DNA of 64,000 nucleotides from Raja brachyura (GCA_963514005.1 OY740826.1:2604001-2668000), one strand, 5' to 3'; shown: positions 15,380 through 34,896, counted from the first letter of the stretch. Notes: generated from the letters alone by a model not told the origin. Made by a program: numbers and translations.

Positions 15380-15559
15380 TCACCGCCCCTCCCTCCCTCC
15401 TCCCACCAACCCCTTCCCCTGCTTGGACTGGAACCAGAGCTCCGTGTATTCCACCCCCTCGCCACTGTGCACGGTGTCTCCGCTGCTCGGTACCTCCCGC
15501 AGGTTGGCGTACACGGCCGCTTGCTCTTCCCCCGGCCCGTCCTGTGCACTCCCCGCGCT
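15380..15559 (-). CDS. Siglec-like gene, coding exon 8 (cytoplasmic tail with tyrosine motifs and stop)
   Basis: Acceptor ccctttccttccAG, phase 0. SAGSAQDGPGEEQAAVYANLREVPSSGDTVHSGEGVEYTELWFQSKQGKGLVGGGREGR*. VEYTEL matches the ITIM consensus. Confidence 0.8.
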   Translation of the reverse strand, partial: SAGSAQDGPGEEQAAVYANLREVPSSGDTVHSGEGVEYTELWFQSKQGKGLVGGGREGR

Positions 15560-15699
15560 CTGGAAGGAAAGGGAAGCAGACGGGCTGTTGTGGGTTTAGT
15601 ACAGAGCAGTGCGCGGTGTGGCCCGGCATTTAATACCATCAGCGAGAAGGTGCACAACTCCTGAACTCCCACAGACCCAGGTTCAGCCATGTTGTTTAT

Positions 15700-15900
15700 G
15701 TTCTCCTCTCTCACACTCTCTCTCTCTCCCTCTCCTGTCACTCTTTCTCTCTCTCTCCTCTTTCTCTCTCACTCTCTCACACTAATGCACTCTATCTCTC
15801 ACACTCGCAGTTTCACACTCTCTCTCTCTCCCCCTCTCACACTGTCTCCCTCTCTCAAACTTTCTCTCACACTCACGCCCACCCTCACACTCTCTCTCAC
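15700..15900. repeat. (CT/CA)n low-complexity microsatellite
   Basis: ctctctcacac runs. Confidence 0.9.
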
Positions 15901-15924
15901 GTAGTTAGATAAATCAATATTCAT

Positions 15925-16260
15925 ACCCCCGGTTGCTAAATACTTTAATTCCGCTTCCCACACTGACCTTTCTGTCCTCGGTCTCCTCCATTGACAGAGT
16001 GAGGCTAAACGCAAATTGGAGGACCAGCATCTCATATTCCGCTTGGGCAGCTTACAGCCCAGTGATATGAACATTGATTTCCCTCACTTGAGGTAGCCCT
16101 GTGTTCCCTCCCTCCATCCCTCCCCCACCCAAGTTGCACCAGCTTCTCGTTTTCACCCAACAAACCGCTAACAGTGACCTGTTTCCTTTATCATCGTTAC
16201 TTTGCATTTATCTTTCATTCAATGTTCTTTATCTCTCTCTACATCATCGTCTATATAGAG
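15925..16260 (+). mobile_element. Penelope-derived non-autonomous repeat (GIY-YIG tail and terminal repeat). Other copies at about 21500-21900, 30300-30790(-), 32990-33500(-), 38520-38900, 41840-42215, 59097-59412(-), 62750-63150(-)
   Basis: Translation EAKRKLEDQHLIFRLGSLQPSDMNI resembles the C-terminus of the Penelope/Neptune GIY-YIG domain. Family members carry the CTGAAGAAGGGTCTCGACCCGAAACGTC motif. Confidence 0.75.
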
Positions 16261-16792
16261 TCGTACATTGTGGAAACAGGCCCTTCGGCCAAACTTGCCC
16301 ACACACTAGTCCCACCTGCCTGCGCTTGGTCCATATCCCTCCAAACTTGTCCTGTCCATGTAGTTTTCTAACCGTTTCTTAAACTTAGGGATAGTCCCAG
16401 CCTCAACTACCTCCTCCAGCAGCACGTTCCACACACATGCCACCGTTTGGGTGAAAAAGCTACCCCTCAGATTTTTTTCCCCTTCACCTTGAACCTATGT
16501 CCTCTGGTCCTCGATTCCCCTACTCTGGGCAAGAGACTCTGTGCATCTACCTGATCTATTCCTCTCATGATTTTATACACCTCTATAAGATCACCCATCA
16601 TCTCCCTGCACTCCAAGGAATAGAGTCCCAGGCTCCTCAACCTCTCCCTGTAGCTCAGGTCCCTCGAGTCTCGACCGAAACGTCAACTGTTCCTTCTCTC
16701 CAGAGATTCTGCCTGTTCCGCTGAGTTACTCCAGCTTTTTGTGCCCACTTTTGTATCATCTGTAGTTGAGATTAAATGCAAAGTTCCACTAC

Positions 16793-16859
16793 CTGATTGG
16801 TGGCAGAGTGTGGGCAGTAGATCACATTGGTGTCTTGGATTCCTGAAGCATCTTCCCTC
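16793..16859 (-). CDS. Siglec-like gene, coding exon 7 (juxtamembrane cytoplasmic)
   Basis: Acceptor ttctgttgctgcAG, donor CAG|GTAGTG. 67 nt, phase 2-0, which exactly bridges the TM exon and exon 8: (R)REDASGIQDTNVIYCPHSATNQ. Confidence 0.75.
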
Positions 16860-31301: not shown

Positions 31302-31848
31302 CTAACACACAGAGAAACAAATACTTTTAGTTAAATATCACTGGTACATCGGTTCACATCGAAATCCCAGTCCCACACGAGCAAGAGTGTTTTTACAAGG
31401 TATAGAAGTGTGAAAACGCCCACCTCCAGATTATCAAGGATACGTCTCACCCCCGGTCACTCCCTTTCCTCCCCTCTCCCATCGGGCAAAAGGTACAGAA
31501 GTGTGAAAACCCACACCTCCAGATTCAGGGACAGTTTCTTCCCAGCTGTTATCAGGCAACTGAATCATCCTACCACAACCAGAGAGAGATCCTGAACTAC
31601 TATCTGCCTAAGCAGAAAGACTATACATGATTGCAGTCGAGCCATTTGCAGAGTATGGATACGTGATAAGGGAATAACGTTTAGTGCAAGGTAAAGCCAG
31701 CAAAGTCCAATCAAGGATAGTCCGATGGGTCACCAGTGATGTCGACAGTAGTTCAACACTGCTCTCTGGTTGTGGTAGGATGGTTCAGTTGCTGATAACA
31801 GCTGGGAGAAACTGTTGAGTGAATGAGTGAATTATACAGAGCACTTAC

Positions 31849-32214
31849 CAGTAACACTGAGCTGTGTTACAGGGCGGTAGCTGAAACGCTCTCCCCCTCC
31901 GAATTCAACTCTGAAAAAATAAGGACCTGCATCTTGCTGCGTGACGTTGTCTATAACTAGGGAACAGTCGTTGTCTCTCAGGATTCCTGACAGCCGGGTC
32001 CGATGCTGAAACTTTGTTGATTCTACACTGGGAATCCCGGAGTGGAAGGCTACAGAATCTTTGTTGTTCGACTCACTTTTATACCAGATTCCAGTCCGTG
32101 GTTTATTGTTCAGGTTCGACGGGTACCTGTAGTGACACGGAATCCGTGCACACAAACCATTCTGCGCTGTCACTTTTAGTGGAGTGTCCGCACCCCACTC
32201 TCCCGACACCACGG
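31849..32214 (-). CDS. Siglec-like gene, coding exon 2 (sialic-acid-binding V-set Ig)
   Basis: Acceptor ccttctctcctcAG, donor G|GTAAGT. 366 nt. GEW..GLCARIPC..GIWYK..RTRLSG..NDCSLVI..DAGPYFFRVEF..RFSY, showing the Siglec Cys pattern and F-strand Arg. Confidence 0.95.
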
Positions 32215-32347
32215 CTGAGGAGAGAAGGAACAATCTTTAGCAGTGAACACCCTGTCAGTTCACTGGGCTTTCCACACCTTTTATCCTGCGCTGTGGACCT
32301 GGTGTGAACAGAGCGTAGAAGAGCGGCATGGTGGCGTAGTGGTAGAG

Positions 32348-32786
32348 CCTCCCTCCTCACCGCCCCTCCCACAGTGCATCACACCCTCCTCACCGCCCCT
32401 CCCACAGTGCATCACTCCCTCCTCACCGCCCCTCCCACAGTGCATCACTCCCTCCTCACCGCCCCTCCCACAGTGCATCACTCCCTCCTCACCGCCCCTC
32501 CCACAGTGCATCACTCCCTCCTCACCGCCCCTCCCACAGTGCATCACTCCCTCCTCACCGCCCCTCCCACAGTGCATCACTCCCTCCTCACCGCCCCTCC
32601 CACAGTGCATCACTCCCTCCTCACCGCCCCTCCCACAGTGCATCACTCCCTCCTCACCGCCCCTCCCACAGTGCATCACTCCCTCCTCACCGCCCCTCCC
32701 ACATTGCATGACTCCCTCCTCACCGCCCCTCCCACAGTGCATCACTCCCTCCTCACCGCCCCTCCCACAGTGCATCACTCCCTCCT
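32348..32786. repeat. 33-bp minisatellite, about 13 copies
   Basis: Unit ccctcctcaccgcccctcccacagtgcatcact, nearly invariant, with no unique spacers. Confidence 0.97.
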
Positions 32787-33614
32787 TTGCTACACATTAT
32801 TCCATCTGCCACTTCCCTGCCCACTCTCCCAACTTGTCAAAGTCCTTCTGCAGAGTCCCTGCTTTCTCTGCACCACCAGCCCCTCCACCGATTTTCGTAT
32901 TATCTGCAAACTTGGCCACAAAGCCTTCAATCCCCTCGTCCAAATCATCAATATACAGATTAGTGGTGCACAAGAAAGAACTGCAGATGGTGGTTTAAAC
33001 CGAAGGTAGACACAAAAATCGGTATTATCTCAGCGGGCCAGGCAGCATCTCTGGAGAGAAGGAATGGGTGATATTTCGGGTCGAGATCCTTCTTCAGACT
33101 GAACGTCACGGGAAAGGCAAACGAGAAATATAGATGATGATGTAGAGAGACAGAACAATGAATGAAAGATATGCAAAAAAGTAATGATAAAGAAAACAAG
33201 CCATTTGTTAGCTTTTTGTTGGGTGAAAACGAGAAGCTGGTGGACTTGGGTGGGGGAGGGATAGAGAGAGGGGGAATGCCAAGGTCACTTGAAGTGAGAG
33301 AAATCAGTATTCATATCACTGGGTTGTAAGCTGCCCAAGCAAAATATGAGATGCTGCTCCTCCAATTTGCATTTGGCCTCACTCTGCCCGTGGAGGAGGC
33401 CCAGGACATAAAGGTCTGTGTGGGAATGGGAAGGGGAATTAAAGTGTTTGGCAACCGGGAGATCAGGTAGGTCCAGGCGGACTGATCGAAGATGTTCAAC
33501 AAAACGATCGTAGTGGCCCCAGCACCGACCCCTGCGGAACTCCGCTAGTCACTGGCAGCCAACCAGTAAAAGCCTCCTCGCCCATAAACACTTCTGAGTT
33601 GTTGCTGATGGTAC

Positions 33615-33654
33615 CTTGGAGAAGGGAGAGGAGGAAGAACGATCTCCCGATCAT
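33615..33654 (-). CDS. Siglec-like gene, coding exon 1 (signal peptide). Whole exon spans 33615-33696
   Basis: acaATG preceded by an in-frame TGA. MIGRSFFLLSLLQ plus G|GT donor in phase 1 joins exon 2 to give MIGRSFFLLSLLQAVVSG-EW. The acceptor tttctcttccAG implies an upstream non-coding exon. Confidence 0.85.
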
Positions 33655-34896
33655 TGTCCGATCCCAGATATCCCGTCAGCTACCCGATCTCCCGGTCTGG
33701 AAGAGAAAGTTATTGCAGTAAAACTCCAGCAACCAATATACATTAAACAACATGGATGCAACGCTGGGGCTCTATGAGGCGCTGGTGAGGCCGCATTTGG
33801 AATATTGTGAGGAATTTTGAGCCCTGTATCTGATGAAGGATGTGTTGGCTCTGGAGAGGGTCCAGAGGAGGCTTACAAGAATGGTCCCAGGAATGAGTGT
33901 GTTTACATATGAGAGCGTTTGACTGCACTGGGTCTGTACTAGCTGGAGTTGAGGAAGAATGAGGAAGGACCGCATTGAATCTTACCGAATAGTGAAAGGC
34001 TTGGATAGAGTGGATGTGGATAGGACCTTTCCACTAATGGGAGAGGTCATAGCCTCAGAATTAGATTTTCTTTTAGGAAGGAGATGAGGAGGAATTTCTT
34101 TAGTTCTTGGTCTGTACTAGCTGGAGTTTAGAAGAATGAGGAAGGACCGCATTGAATCTTACCAAATAGTGAAAGGCTTGGATAGAGTGGATGTGGATAG
34201 GACTTTTCCACTAATGGGAGAGGTCATAGCCGTAGAATTAGATTTTCTTTTAGGAAGGAGATGAGGAGGAATTTCTTTAGTGAGAGGGTGGTGAATCTGT
34301 GAAATTCTTTGCCACAGAAGGCTGTGGCGGCCCAGGCAGTGGATATTGTTAAGGCAGAGATAGATAGATTATAAATTATACGGGTGTCAGGGGTTATGGG
34401 GAGAAGGCAGGAGAATGGGGTTAGGAGGGGTTAGGAGGGAGAGAGAGATAAGCCATGATTAAAAGGCAGAGTAGAATGGATGGGCTGAATGGCCTAATTC
34501 TGCTCCAATCCATGACCGTAAATATCACCAACACTGTTGGGTTGCATCACACTTTGGTTTTGGACCAACTCTGCCCAAGACCACAAGAGATTGCTGAGAG
34601 GTTAGTTTAGTTTAGAGTTACAGCACACAAACACGTTCCCACAGCCCACCGAATCCATGCCGACCAGTGATCACCCGTTCACACACTAGTTCTATGTTTC
34701 GTTTTTGAGATACAATGTGGAAACAGGCCCTTCGACCCACCCAGTCTGTGCCGACCAGCGATCCCCGCACACTAACACTGTCCTAACTAGGGACAATTTA
34801 CAATTTTGCCAAGCCAATAAAACCTACAAACCTGCACGTCATTGGAACGTGGGAGGAAACCAGAAAATACCCAAGCAGGTCAAGAGTTCAGATTCA

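What the first reader, a model, noticed from the sequence alone, without database searches (positions are those of the whole stretch)
15380..33696. Complete 539-aa Siglec/MAG-like receptor hidden across eight exons among transposons
Seen: eight GT-AG exons with mutually compatible phases (40+366+294+282+294+97+67+180 = 1620 nt) give one uninterrupted ORF. The leader, TM and both tail exons are absent from the ORF track. Known: the V-set Cys layout, A-strand Trp, YFFRVE arginine and domain-2 extra Cys are Siglec hallmarks, and the CxC proximal domain is MAG-like. Inference: a V+3C2 architecture with an ITIM tail matches none of Siglec-1, CD22, MAG or Siglec-15, so it may be a cartilaginous-fish-specific inhibitory Siglec lineage analogous to the CD33-related Siglecs.
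Basis: partly seen in the sequence, partly recalled or inferred. Interest (0 to 1): 0.8.

Follow-up and report, generated by a model that had tools for sequence, protein, structure and literature searches.

The report
Skate inhibitory Siglec receptor gene
An intact eight-exon gene for a sialic-acid-lectin-type (Siglec) immune receptor with an inhibitory-type tail lies among transposons in a skate-like genome. It is real, but it is one ordinary member of a large shark-and-ray receptor family that gene-prediction pipelines already list in related species.

Summary
On the minus strand, eight exons of 40+366+294+282+294+97+67+180 nt give one open frame of 539 codons plus a stop. All acceptors are AG, all donors GT, and all phases fit. 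Every exon, including the 13-residue leader, the TM exon and both tail exons, is matched by predicted proteins of skates and rays.

The V-set exon is a Siglec lectin domain with the essential Arg, the A-strand Trp and the three-Cys layout. Its predicted fold matches solved Siglec V-sets at TM-score 0.79-0.87.

The gene belongs to a large, multi-copy family whose named members here are all elasmobranch. Domain number varies, and tails are inhibitory, ITAM-bearing or short. It is therefore not a 1:1 MAG or CD22 orthologue. It resembles mammalian CD33-related Siglecs, with the same domain order as a bat Siglec-5.

Deep placement relative to MAG, CD22 and CD33r is unresolved. No RNA evidence could be obtained.

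RefSeq already predicts such genes in at least 20 species under inconsistent names. This scan has flagged related Siglec genes elsewhere in the same genome. I found no paper describing the family.

Verdict: a new member of a known kind, of moderate interest. The joined protein was never searched or folded; all work was done exon by exon.

The parts
33615..33654 (-). Exon 1: ATG plus signal-peptide leader (MIGRSFFLLSLLQ), 40 nt, ends in phase 1, donor GT
   Evidence: The leader is identical to that of Rhinoraja longicauda P0228 and near-identical in Pristis P0155 and in P0010.
31849..32214 (-). Exon 2: Siglec V-set lectin domain, 366 nt, phase 1-1. By my numbering of the model it carries W20, C35, C40, C97 and the canonical R115.
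   Evidence: Pfam V-set 2.8e-12 and Ig_CD22 3.2e-07. PDB phmmer gives MAG 3.9e-16, sialoadhesin 1.7e-15 and CD33 5e-13. The AF2 model has pLDDT 90, and Foldseek TM-scores to Siglec V-sets are 0.79-0.87.
31008..31301 (-). Exon 3: C2-set domain 2 with the extra Cys (TCSFNTTC...LTC), 294 nt, phase 1-1
   Evidence: Pfam C2-set_2 1.2e-09. The best PDB match is CD33 domain 2 at 7e-08, with the Cys residues aligned. It is 84% identical to Rhinoraja P0228.
30163..30252 (-). Truncated remnant of a second I-set exon in intron 3. Only the 3' third is left, and it keeps its GTGAGT donor. The model skips it.
   Evidence: It is 90% identical to the 3' end of exon 4 and 92% to the first I-set of Rhinoraja P0228. 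Its upstream part is replaced by unrelated sequence containing a stop.
24121..24402 (-). Exon 4: I-set/C2 domain 3, 282 nt, phase 1-1
   Evidence: Pfam I-set 3.3e-11. Within MAG, PDB alignment places it on domain 4, residues 317-392. It is 77-78% identical to skate models.
20706..20999 (-). Exon 5: membrane-proximal Ig domain with C..CxC, 294 nt, phase 1-1
   Evidence: The only strong PDB match is MAG domain 5 at 8.5e-10. It is 86% identical to Amblyraja P0238. GGT at the donor is the only in-phase NGT codon before the stop.
18907..19003 (-). Exon 6: transmembrane helix (WMAVLLTAGIILIAELAGFFIY) plus KYTQ stop-transfer, 97 nt
   Evidence: It is 81% identical to Amblyraja P0238. The LAGFFIYKY motif is shared with rays.
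16793..16859 (-). Exon 7: juxtamembrane tail exon (REDASGIQDTNVIYCPHSATNQ), 67 nt
   Evidence: It shares 19 of 21 residues with Amblyraja P0238 (EEASGNQDTNVIYCPHSATNQ). It is 5 residues shorter than in the skate models.
15380..15559 (-). Exon 8: signalling tail with AVYANL (Y497, off-consensus) and VEYTEL (Y518, canonical ITIM), then TGA, 180 nt
   Evidence: It is 81% identical over 48 residues to Amblyraja P0238 and 69% to Rhinoraja P0228. Motif homologues run through the whole family.

Best explanation
This is an intact gene for a type-I membrane receptor of the Siglec family. It is the inhibitory-type member of a multi-copy shark-and-ray receptor family.

**Shown.** The gene has a signal peptide, a Siglec V-set domain with the canonical arginine, three further Ig domains (C2, I-set and a CxC membrane-proximal domain), one transmembrane helix and an 82-residue tail (residues 458-539 of my numbering). 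The tail carries two tyrosine motifs.

**Inferred mechanism.** The V-set binds sialylated glycans through the Arg (R115 in my numbering of the model), flanked by the A-strand Trp and a G-strand aromatic residue. On engagement, Src-family kinases would phosphorylate Y518 (VEYTEL, a canonical ITIM) and perhaps Y497 (AVYANL). These would recruit SHP-1/SHP-2-type phosphatases and damp activation of the leukocyte that carries the receptor.

Closely related skate genes, about 70% identical in the V-set, carry a DAP12-like ITAM instead. The family therefore probably works as paired inhibitory and activating receptors, as mammalian CD33-related Siglecs do.
For: - **Gene structure:** eight exons, canonical splice sites, compatible phases and no stop.
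- **Cross-species support:** every exon is matched in order by skate and ray RefSeq models. Hemitrygon P0205 (540 aa) has the same V-C2-I-CxC-TM-tail build.
- **Siglec identity of the V-set:** Pfam, PDB sequence search with the Arg, Trp and Cys aligned, Arg nearly invariant in 26 relatives, and the AF2 model at pLDDT 90 with the top ~40 Foldseek hits all Siglec V-sets.
- **Domain 2:** the extra Cys aligns with CD33.
- **Tail motifs:** VEYTEL fits the ITIM signature [I/V/L/S]xYxx[L/V] quoted in PMC7226832. Homologous paired motifs run through the family, for example LLYANI...TEYAQI in sharks.
- **ITAM-bearing relatives:** SPYQELxxGERDLYSDL occurs in Rhinoraja P0236, P0237 and P0227, whose V-sets are 69-72% identical to the window's.
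- **Family range:** multi-copy, with all named members elasmobranch.
Against: - No RNA evidence. No RNA run holds the locus. The one read-laying run gave only repeat clutter and probable DNA runs.
- The proximal motif AVYANL has Ala at position -2 and fails the ITIM signature.
- A Glu sits in the TM helix, which is unusual for a purely inhibitory receptor.
- The gene has in-frame gaps of 5 aa (exon 7) and about 13 aa (exon 8) against the skate models, and 9 extra C-terminal residues encoded by a low-complexity repeat.
- A neighbouring I-set exon has been destroyed.
- Sialic-acid binding, phosphorylation and SHP recruitment are inferred from family knowledge, not tested.
Confidence: 0.8

Rival explanations
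1. It is the skate orthologue of myelin-associated glycoprotein (MAG/Siglec-4), acting in glia rather than as an immune checkpoint.
For: In the PDB, the V-set, the I-set exon and the CxC exon each find MAG as their best or only Siglec match. NCBI names several family members 'MAG-like'. Teleost MAG is reported to carry an ITIM (PMC7226832).
Against: - The gene has four Ig domains, not five.
- Domain 2 matches CD33 better than MAG.
- The family has many copies per species. At least 9 models lie on one Hemitrygon chromosome, with 1 to 8 Ig domains.
- Sharks have separate 5-Ig 'MAG-like' genes of about 630 aa, whose V-sets lie outside this clade.
- Teleost MAG falls outside the clade in the V-set tree, although the AU test does not reject joining them (p 0.215).
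Confidence: 0.06
2. It is an unexpressed or decaying copy: an open reading frame that happens to be still intact in a birth-and-death gene cluster.
For: - No RNA holder was found.
- The introns are packed with high-copy repeats.
- One I-set exon is already truncated.
- The tail has in-frame deletions relative to skate relatives, and its end runs into a simple repeat.
Against: All eight exons are open. All 14 splice signals are canonical. The key lectin residues and Cys are kept, and exon-level identity to skate models is 67-86% with no frameshift.
Confidence: 0.12
3. It is a receptor of Siglec build that has shifted to a non-sialic-acid ligand or to adhesion, or one that signals through a TM partner recruited by the membrane Glu rather than through its tail.
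For: The G-strand aromatic residue is Phe where sialoadhesin has Trp. The TM Glu is conserved in three skate sequences. The proximal motif is off-consensus.
Against: The Arg, the A-strand Trp and the Cys framework of the sialic-acid site are all present. The distal ITIM is canonical. The TM Glu is absent from ray and most shark members, which share the same tail.
Confidence: 0.1

Closest known systems
Predicted elasmobranch Siglec-like proteins in RefSeq: Rhinoraja longicauda 'Siglec-13' (P0228, 552 aa), Amblyraja radiata 'Siglec-12' (P0238, 507 aa) and Hemitrygon akajei 'Siglec-13' (P0205, 540 aa)
   Same: - Same leader, identical in P0228.
- Same V-set, C2, I-set and CxC domain types.
- Same TM, including IAELAG in the two skates.
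- Same tail motifs: AVY(A/S)NL and VEYA(E/D)LWFQSKQG.
- P0205 has exactly the same domain order and nearly the same length.
   Different: - Exon identity is 67-86%, so these are paralogues, or orthologues in other genera.
- P0228 has two I-sets and no CxC domain.
- P0238 uses a later donor after the CxC domain.
- The window gene lacks 5 and about 13 tail residues and has 9 extra at the C-terminus.
- All of these are automatic predictions with inconsistent names. None has been studied.
Mammalian CD33-related Siglecs of the four-Ig type, represented here by Myotis lucifugus Siglec-5 (P0286, 548 aa)
   Same: - Collinear V, C2, I-type, CxC-type proximal domain and TM.
- A tail with a proximal YxxL motif and a distal EYxx(I/L) motif.
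- Domain 2 of the window gene matches CD33 domain 2 best in the PDB.
- A multi-copy, rapidly varying family with inhibitory and activating members.
   Different: - Sequence similarity is low, at 14-34 bits per domain.
- Clade membership is unresolved. The two V-set trees disagree, and the AU test (p 0.43) neither supports nor rejects a union.
- Synteny was not tested.
- Some activating partners here carry a built-in ITAM rather than a TM Lys for DAP12.
Myelin-associated glycoprotein (MAG, Siglec-4)
   Same: MAG is the best PDB sequence match of the V-set (3.9e-16), domain 4 for the I-set exon, and domain 5 for the CxC exon, including the C..CxC pattern.
   Different: - MAG has five Ig domains and is a single-copy conserved gene.
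- The window gene has four Ig domains and sits in a multi-copy clade whose named members are all elasmobranch.
- Its domain 2 is closer to CD33.
CD22 (Siglec-2)
   Same: Both are inhibitory Siglecs with tyrosine motifs. Elasmobranch genes named 'CD22-like' lie on the same contigs as family members. In one tree they are the family's nearest relatives, at 96/98 support.
   Different: CD22 has seven Ig domains and several ITIMs. The window's V-set does not reach E 0.01 against any CD22 structure.

Membership tests
Siglec family (I-type sialic-acid lectins) | N-terminal V-set domain of Siglec type | tested here: met
   Pfam V-set and Ig_CD22 are both above cut-off. The 18 best PDB sequence hits are all Siglecs. 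The AF2 model has pLDDT 90, with TM-scores of 0.79-0.87 to sialoadhesin, MAG, CD33 and Siglec-5, -7, -8, -10 and -15.
Siglec family (I-type sialic-acid lectins) | Conserved F-strand arginine that pairs with the sialic-acid carboxylate, plus the A-strand Trp | tested here: met
   The Arg of YFFRVE aligns with the Arg of MAG YYFRGD and of sialoadhesin YNFRFE, and WG aligns with sialoadhesin WG. The Arg is conserved in at least 90% of 26 aligned relatives.
Siglec family (I-type sialic-acid lectins) | Unusual cysteine layout: three Cys in the V-set and an extra Cys in domain 2 for the interdomain disulfide | tested here: met
   C21, C26 and C83 of exon 2 are conserved or invariant. TCSFNTTC...LTC of exon 3 aligns with CD33 TCSVSWAC...LTC. 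This shows the positions only; the disulfides themselves are not shown.
Siglec family (I-type sialic-acid lectins) | Binding of sialylated glycans | not testable with these tools
   Needs an Fc-fusion glycan array with and without the Arg-to-Ala change.
ITIM-bearing inhibitory receptors | Cytoplasmic [I/V/L/S]-x-Y-x-x-[L/V] motif (signature as quoted in PMC7226832) | tested here: met
   The distal VEYTEL fits. The proximal AVYANL fails at position -2. In sharks the homologous proximal motif is the canonical LLYANI.
MAG (Siglec-4) orthologue | V plus four C2 domains, and single-copy 1:1 orthology across vertebrates | tested here: not met
   The gene has four Ig exons only, plus one dead remnant. 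The family is multi-copy with variable architecture. Separate 5-Ig MAG-like genes exist in sharks.
CD22 (Siglec-2) orthologue | V plus six C2 domains, and a CD22-type V-set | tested here: not met
   The gene has four Ig domains. No CD22 chain appears among the V-set hits at E 0.01 or better.
CD33-related Siglecs | V plus 1-4 C2 domains, ITIM plus membrane-distal ITIM-like motif, in a multi-copy, fast-evolving cluster with activating counterparts | tested here: met
   The architecture and motif order are collinear with Myotis Siglec-5. The family is multi-copy with inhibitory and ITAM tails. This shows that it works like a CD33r Siglec, not that it descends from them.
CD33-related Siglecs | Phylogenetic membership of the CD33r clade | tested here: inconclusive
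   In the first V-set tree the family groups with tetrapod CD33r/Siglec-10-type sequences and shark MAG-like genes at 85/87. After three long-branch rows were dropped, it groups with elasmobranch 'CD22-like' genes at 96/98. AU p is 0.43 for a union with tetrapod CD33r-type and 0.215 for a union with the teleost MAG group.
CD33-related Siglecs | Conserved synteny with the CD33r cluster | not tested
   The window holds no other cellular gene, only transposons. No wider locus was available.

The most novel reading that the evidence does not exclude
The elasmobranch family could be the true co-orthologue of the tetrapod CD33-related/Siglec-10-type Siglecs rather than a mere analogue of them. Both share the collinear V-C2-I-CxC-TM build and the proximal YxxL plus distal EYxx(I/L) tail. 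If so, a CD33r-type paired inhibitory/activating Siglec cluster already existed in the jawed-vertebrate ancestor and was lost in teleosts. The literature I read describes teleosts as lacking CD33r Siglecs.
Probability: 0.25. Interest if true: 0.6.

Novelty: new member of a known kind. Interest (0 to 1): 0.35.

Why it matters
The paper I read (PMC7226832) says fish regularly have only Siglec-1, CD22, MAG and Siglec-15 and lack inhibitory CD33-related Siglecs. It does not mention cartilaginous fishes.

This gene adds one more well-supported example that sharks and rays hold a large, variable Siglec family with CD33r-like architecture. That family has inhibitory members and closely related ITAM-bearing members. 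It is predicted by pipelines under inconsistent names and, as far as I could find, is undescribed in papers.

As a single gene it changes little. As part of that family it offers a clean inhibitory member for testing two questions: whether sialic-acid self-recognition by paired receptors predates bony vertebrates, and how exon loss, duplication and shuffling build such families.

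Tried and rejected
**RNA evidence.**
- The look-up of sequencing runs listed no holder on record as RNA.
- The single read-laying run, on 15300-21100 with runs X1-X4, returned mainly contigs of high-copy repeats. The tool marked two of the runs as probably DNA. No exon-exon joint was listed.
- My choice of min_likeness 90 made the repeat clutter worse.

**Other exons and copies.**
- I looked for further Ig exons or a second gene copy by tblastn of the exons and of six relatives against the window. 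Only the truncated I-set remnant at 30252..30163 turned up.
- An alternative exon 7 at 16856..16790 was rejected. Its acceptor and donor are poorer, and homology fixes the frame and end at ...ATNQ.
- A later donor for exon 5, as in Amblyraja P0238, was rejected. The window has no other in-phase NGT codon before the stop.

**Deep phylogeny.** The V-set alone (121 columns) does not resolve it. Two taxon samplings gave different sister groups, and the AU tests rejected nothing. The AU test of family plus sialoadhesin did not finish.

**Other tools.**
- The ESM Atlas did not take the window's exon 5. The look-up with Pristis P0155 only repeated 'MAG-like/Siglec'.
- Four paper searches found no description of the elasmobranch family.

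**Left out on instruction.** The joined 539-residue protein was never typed, searched or folded.

Full report
**1. Observation**

The feature lies on the minus strand. The ORF listing at 60 aa or more shows four Ig-like ORFs there (31832..32233, 30856..31320, 24113..24433, 20653..21075). It shows nothing for a leader, a TM segment or the tail frame.

This recovered:
- e2 32214..31849, e3 31301..31008, e4 24402..24121 and e5 20999..20706, all in phase 1-1.
- a single hydrophobic 97-nt candidate, e6 19003..18907.
- a single plausible 180-nt terminal exon, e8 15559..15380.

The leader is 33654..33615, starting at ATG and followed by GT.

Exon 7 had many mechanical candidates. Sequence context (tgctgcag|G ... 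CAG|gtagtg) and homology pick 16859..16793.

The total is 1620 nt. The six split codons read A, D, Y, Y, A and R, and every acceptor follows a pyrimidine tract. The window has no N.

**2. Is it more than chance?**

Yes. A full HMMER scan of 1.84 billion representatives with the V-set exon gave 1062 hits, 26 of them below 1e-30.

The named best hits are RefSeq models of skates, rays and sharks. A word search with the Mobula member P0012 listed about 100 more from at least 20 elasmobranch species.

These natural proteins match every exon in order:
- Rhinoraja longicauda P0228 begins with the identical MIGRSFFLLSLLQ.
- Amblyraja radiata P0238 reads ...IAELAGILIYKYIQRREYVTMEEASGNQDTNVIYCPHSATNQSAGSG...AAVYANLRELPSSGDTVHSGEVVEYAELWFQSKQGEG.
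- Hemitrygon akajei P0205 (540 aa) has the same V-C2-I-CxC-TM-tail order.

Per-exon identity to the best skate model is 80% (e2), 85% (e3), 78% (e4), 86% (e5), 81% (e6), 19 of 21 residues (e7) and 81% (e8).

The window gene differs in four ways:
- a 5-residue gap in exon 7
- a gap of about 13 residues in exon 8
- nine extra C-terminal residues encoded by a simple repeat
- use of the early exon-5 donor, which is the only in-phase one here

**3. What could not be shown**

Expression could not be shown. No listed run holds the locus as RNA. My one read-laying run, on 15300-21100, returned repeat-derived contigs from runs that are probably DNA.

That call does show one thing. The intronic bins 15882-20343 are high-copy repeats (word depth 10^4-10^5), while the bins holding exons 5 and 8 are low-copy (1-60). 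Intron 3 carries reverse-transcriptase fragments on the other strand. 'Among transposons' is therefore correct.

**4. What it is**

All work was done exon by exon.

- **Exon 2 (V-set).** Pfam V-set 2.8e-12 and Ig_CD22 3.2e-07. The 18 best PDB sequences are all Siglecs: MAG 3.9e-16, sialoadhesin 1.7e-15, CD33 5e-13, then Siglec-8, -5, -10, -7 and -15. The Arg of YFFRVE lies on the essential Arg of MAG and sialoadhesin, WG lies on the A-strand Trp, and a Phe sits where sialoadhesin has its G-strand Trp. With an alignment of 26 relatives, AlphaFold2 gives pLDDT 90.2. Foldseek ranks Siglec V-sets first throughout, at TM-score 0.79-0.87.
- **Exon 3 (domain 2).** C2-set_2. The best PDB match is CD33 domain 2, with the extra Cys aligned.
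- **Exon 4 (domain 3).** I-set. Within MAG it aligns to domain 4.
- **Exon 5 (CxC domain).** Weak in Pfam, but it matches MAG domain 5 at 8.5e-10, including C...CxC. The domain is not exclusive to MAG. It also ends the ectodomain of elasmobranch 'CD22-like' and 'SMP-like' proteins, of shark 5-Ig 'MAG-like' proteins, and of a bat Siglec-5 (PSCSWEDQGLHCSCS).

**5. The family**

A survey of the 108 retrieved proteins whose V-set is at least 48% identical to the window's shows several things.

Domain number varies:
- V only (P0010)
- V-C2-CxC (P0155)
- V-C2-I-I (P0228)
- V-C2-five I-CxC (P0012)
- several V-sets in tandem (P0154)

Tail classes also vary:
- inhibitory type: LLYANI...TEYAQI in sharks, xVYxxL...VxYxxL in rays and skates
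- a DAP12-like ITAM, SPYQELxxGERDLYSDL, in Rhinoraja P0236, P0237 and P0227 and in Pristis P0013
- a YxNC-x7-YxN(V/I) motif
- short tails

The ITAM-bearing Rhinoraja proteins are 69-72% identical to the window gene in the V-set. The family therefore looks like a paired receptor family, with the window gene on the inhibitory side.

Its distal VEYTEL meets the ITIM signature quoted in PMC7226832. Its proximal AVYANL does not, although it is the positional homologue of the sharks' canonical LLYANI.

The TM Glu (IAELAG) is kept in the three skate sequences and absent in rays.

**6. Relation to known Siglecs**

In a careful V-set tree the family is an elasmobranch-only clade (90/90). The window gene sits in a skate subclade (99/95, starred) with Amblyraja, Leucoraja and Rhinoraja sequences.

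That tree joined the family (85/87) with shark 5-Ig MAG-like genes and tetrapod CD33r/Siglec-10-type sequences. Teleost MAG, sialoadhesin and 'CD22-like' genes fell outside.

After I dropped three very long rows (Polypterus P0278, lungfish P0022, Xenopus P0283), the best tree instead joined the family with elasmobranch 'CD22-like' genes (96/98). AU tests did not reject a union with tetrapod CD33r-type (p 0.43) or with the teleost/gar MAG group (p 0.215).

The deep placement is therefore unresolved. What is solid is that the family is multi-copy and that all its named members here are elasmobranch. It is not a 1:1 orthologue of MAG or CD22.

The CxC-domain tree mixes domains from proteins whose V-sets lie in different clades. 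Pristis P0155 and P0073 are nearly identical in this domain. That points to exon shuffling or gene conversion inside the cluster.

**7. Comparison and novelty**

- The four-Ig build matches none of Siglec-1, CD22, MAG or Siglec-15, by the domain counts known for those proteins. This rests on established knowledge.
- It is collinear with a mammalian four-Ig CD33r Siglec, Myotis Siglec-5 P0286.
- PMC7226832 states that fish regularly have four Siglecs and lack CD33r Siglecs, and that fish MAG carries an ITIM. It does not mention cartilaginous fishes.
- Four searches found no paper on the elasmobranch family.
- The family is nevertheless already in RefSeq, under inconsistent automatic names: Siglec-5, -6, -8, -10, -11, -12, -13 and -14, and MAG-, CD22-, CD33-, sialoadhesin- and hemicentin-like.
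- This scan has already noted 27 Siglec-related findings in this genome. They include another MAG-like gene 17 kb before this window, and ITAM-bearing relatives.

**8. Verdict**

The gene is a new member of a known, predicted but unstudied kind. Interest is moderate. Expression and ligand binding remain to be shown.

Noticed in passing
window 30163-30252 (-): Remnant of a second I-set exon in intron 3. Only the last ~30 codons survive, at 90% identity to exon 4 and 92% to the first I-set of Rhinoraja P0228. The GTGAGT donor is intact. An in-phase AG (tcatctgacag|GG) could in principle make an 81-nt cryptic exon.
   Followed up: partly
window 32349-32786: Tandem repeat of a 33-bp unit, 13.3 copies at 98% matches, inside intron 1. 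Translated, it gives the long PSSPPLPQCIT repeat ORFs on both strands.
   Followed up: no
window 29704-30090: Long (GT)n/(GA)n-rich simple repeat just downstream of the I-set remnant, in intron 3.
   Followed up: no
window 18907-19003 (-), residue E446 of the model: The Glu inside the TM helix (IAELAG) is conserved in Amblyraja P0238 and Rhinoraja P0228. Rays have SMLLAG and Pristis has NAVLAG at that position. It looks like a skate-lineage feature rather than a family-wide one.
   Followed up: partly
proteins P0155 and P0073 (Pristis pectinata), P0135, P0266: The CxC membrane-proximal domains of proteins whose V-sets lie in different clades cluster together, and within Pristis they are almost identical. 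This suggests exon shuffling or gene conversion within the Siglec cluster.
   Followed up: partly
proteins P0236, P0237, P0227 (Rhinoraja), P0013 (Pristis): Close relatives of the window gene carry a complete DAP12-like ITAM (YQELxxGxRDLYS[D/E]L) in their own tail instead of the inhibitory motifs.
   Followed up: partly
window 2941-8476 (+): Two long intact ORFs of 377 aa and 1284 aa, the second apparently with endonuclease and reverse-transcriptase regions. They look like a full-length L1-type LINE.
   Followed up: no
window 44103-46711 (-) and 56783-58927 (-): CR1/L2-like non-LTR retrotransposon ORFs. The first copy has long open endonuclease and RT parts. The second is a degraded copy of the same element.
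   Followed up: no
window 49569-50387 (+) and 51191-55888 (-): A Tc1/mariner-like transposase ORF, followed by a DIRS-like element with tyrosine-recombinase, RT/RNase H and gag-like ORFs.
   Followed up: no
window 36399-37699 (-): A proline-rich low-complexity block of about 1.3 kb, with strong GC skew (0.56) and long open frames on both strands. It is probably a simple-repeat array rather than a gene.
   Followed up: no
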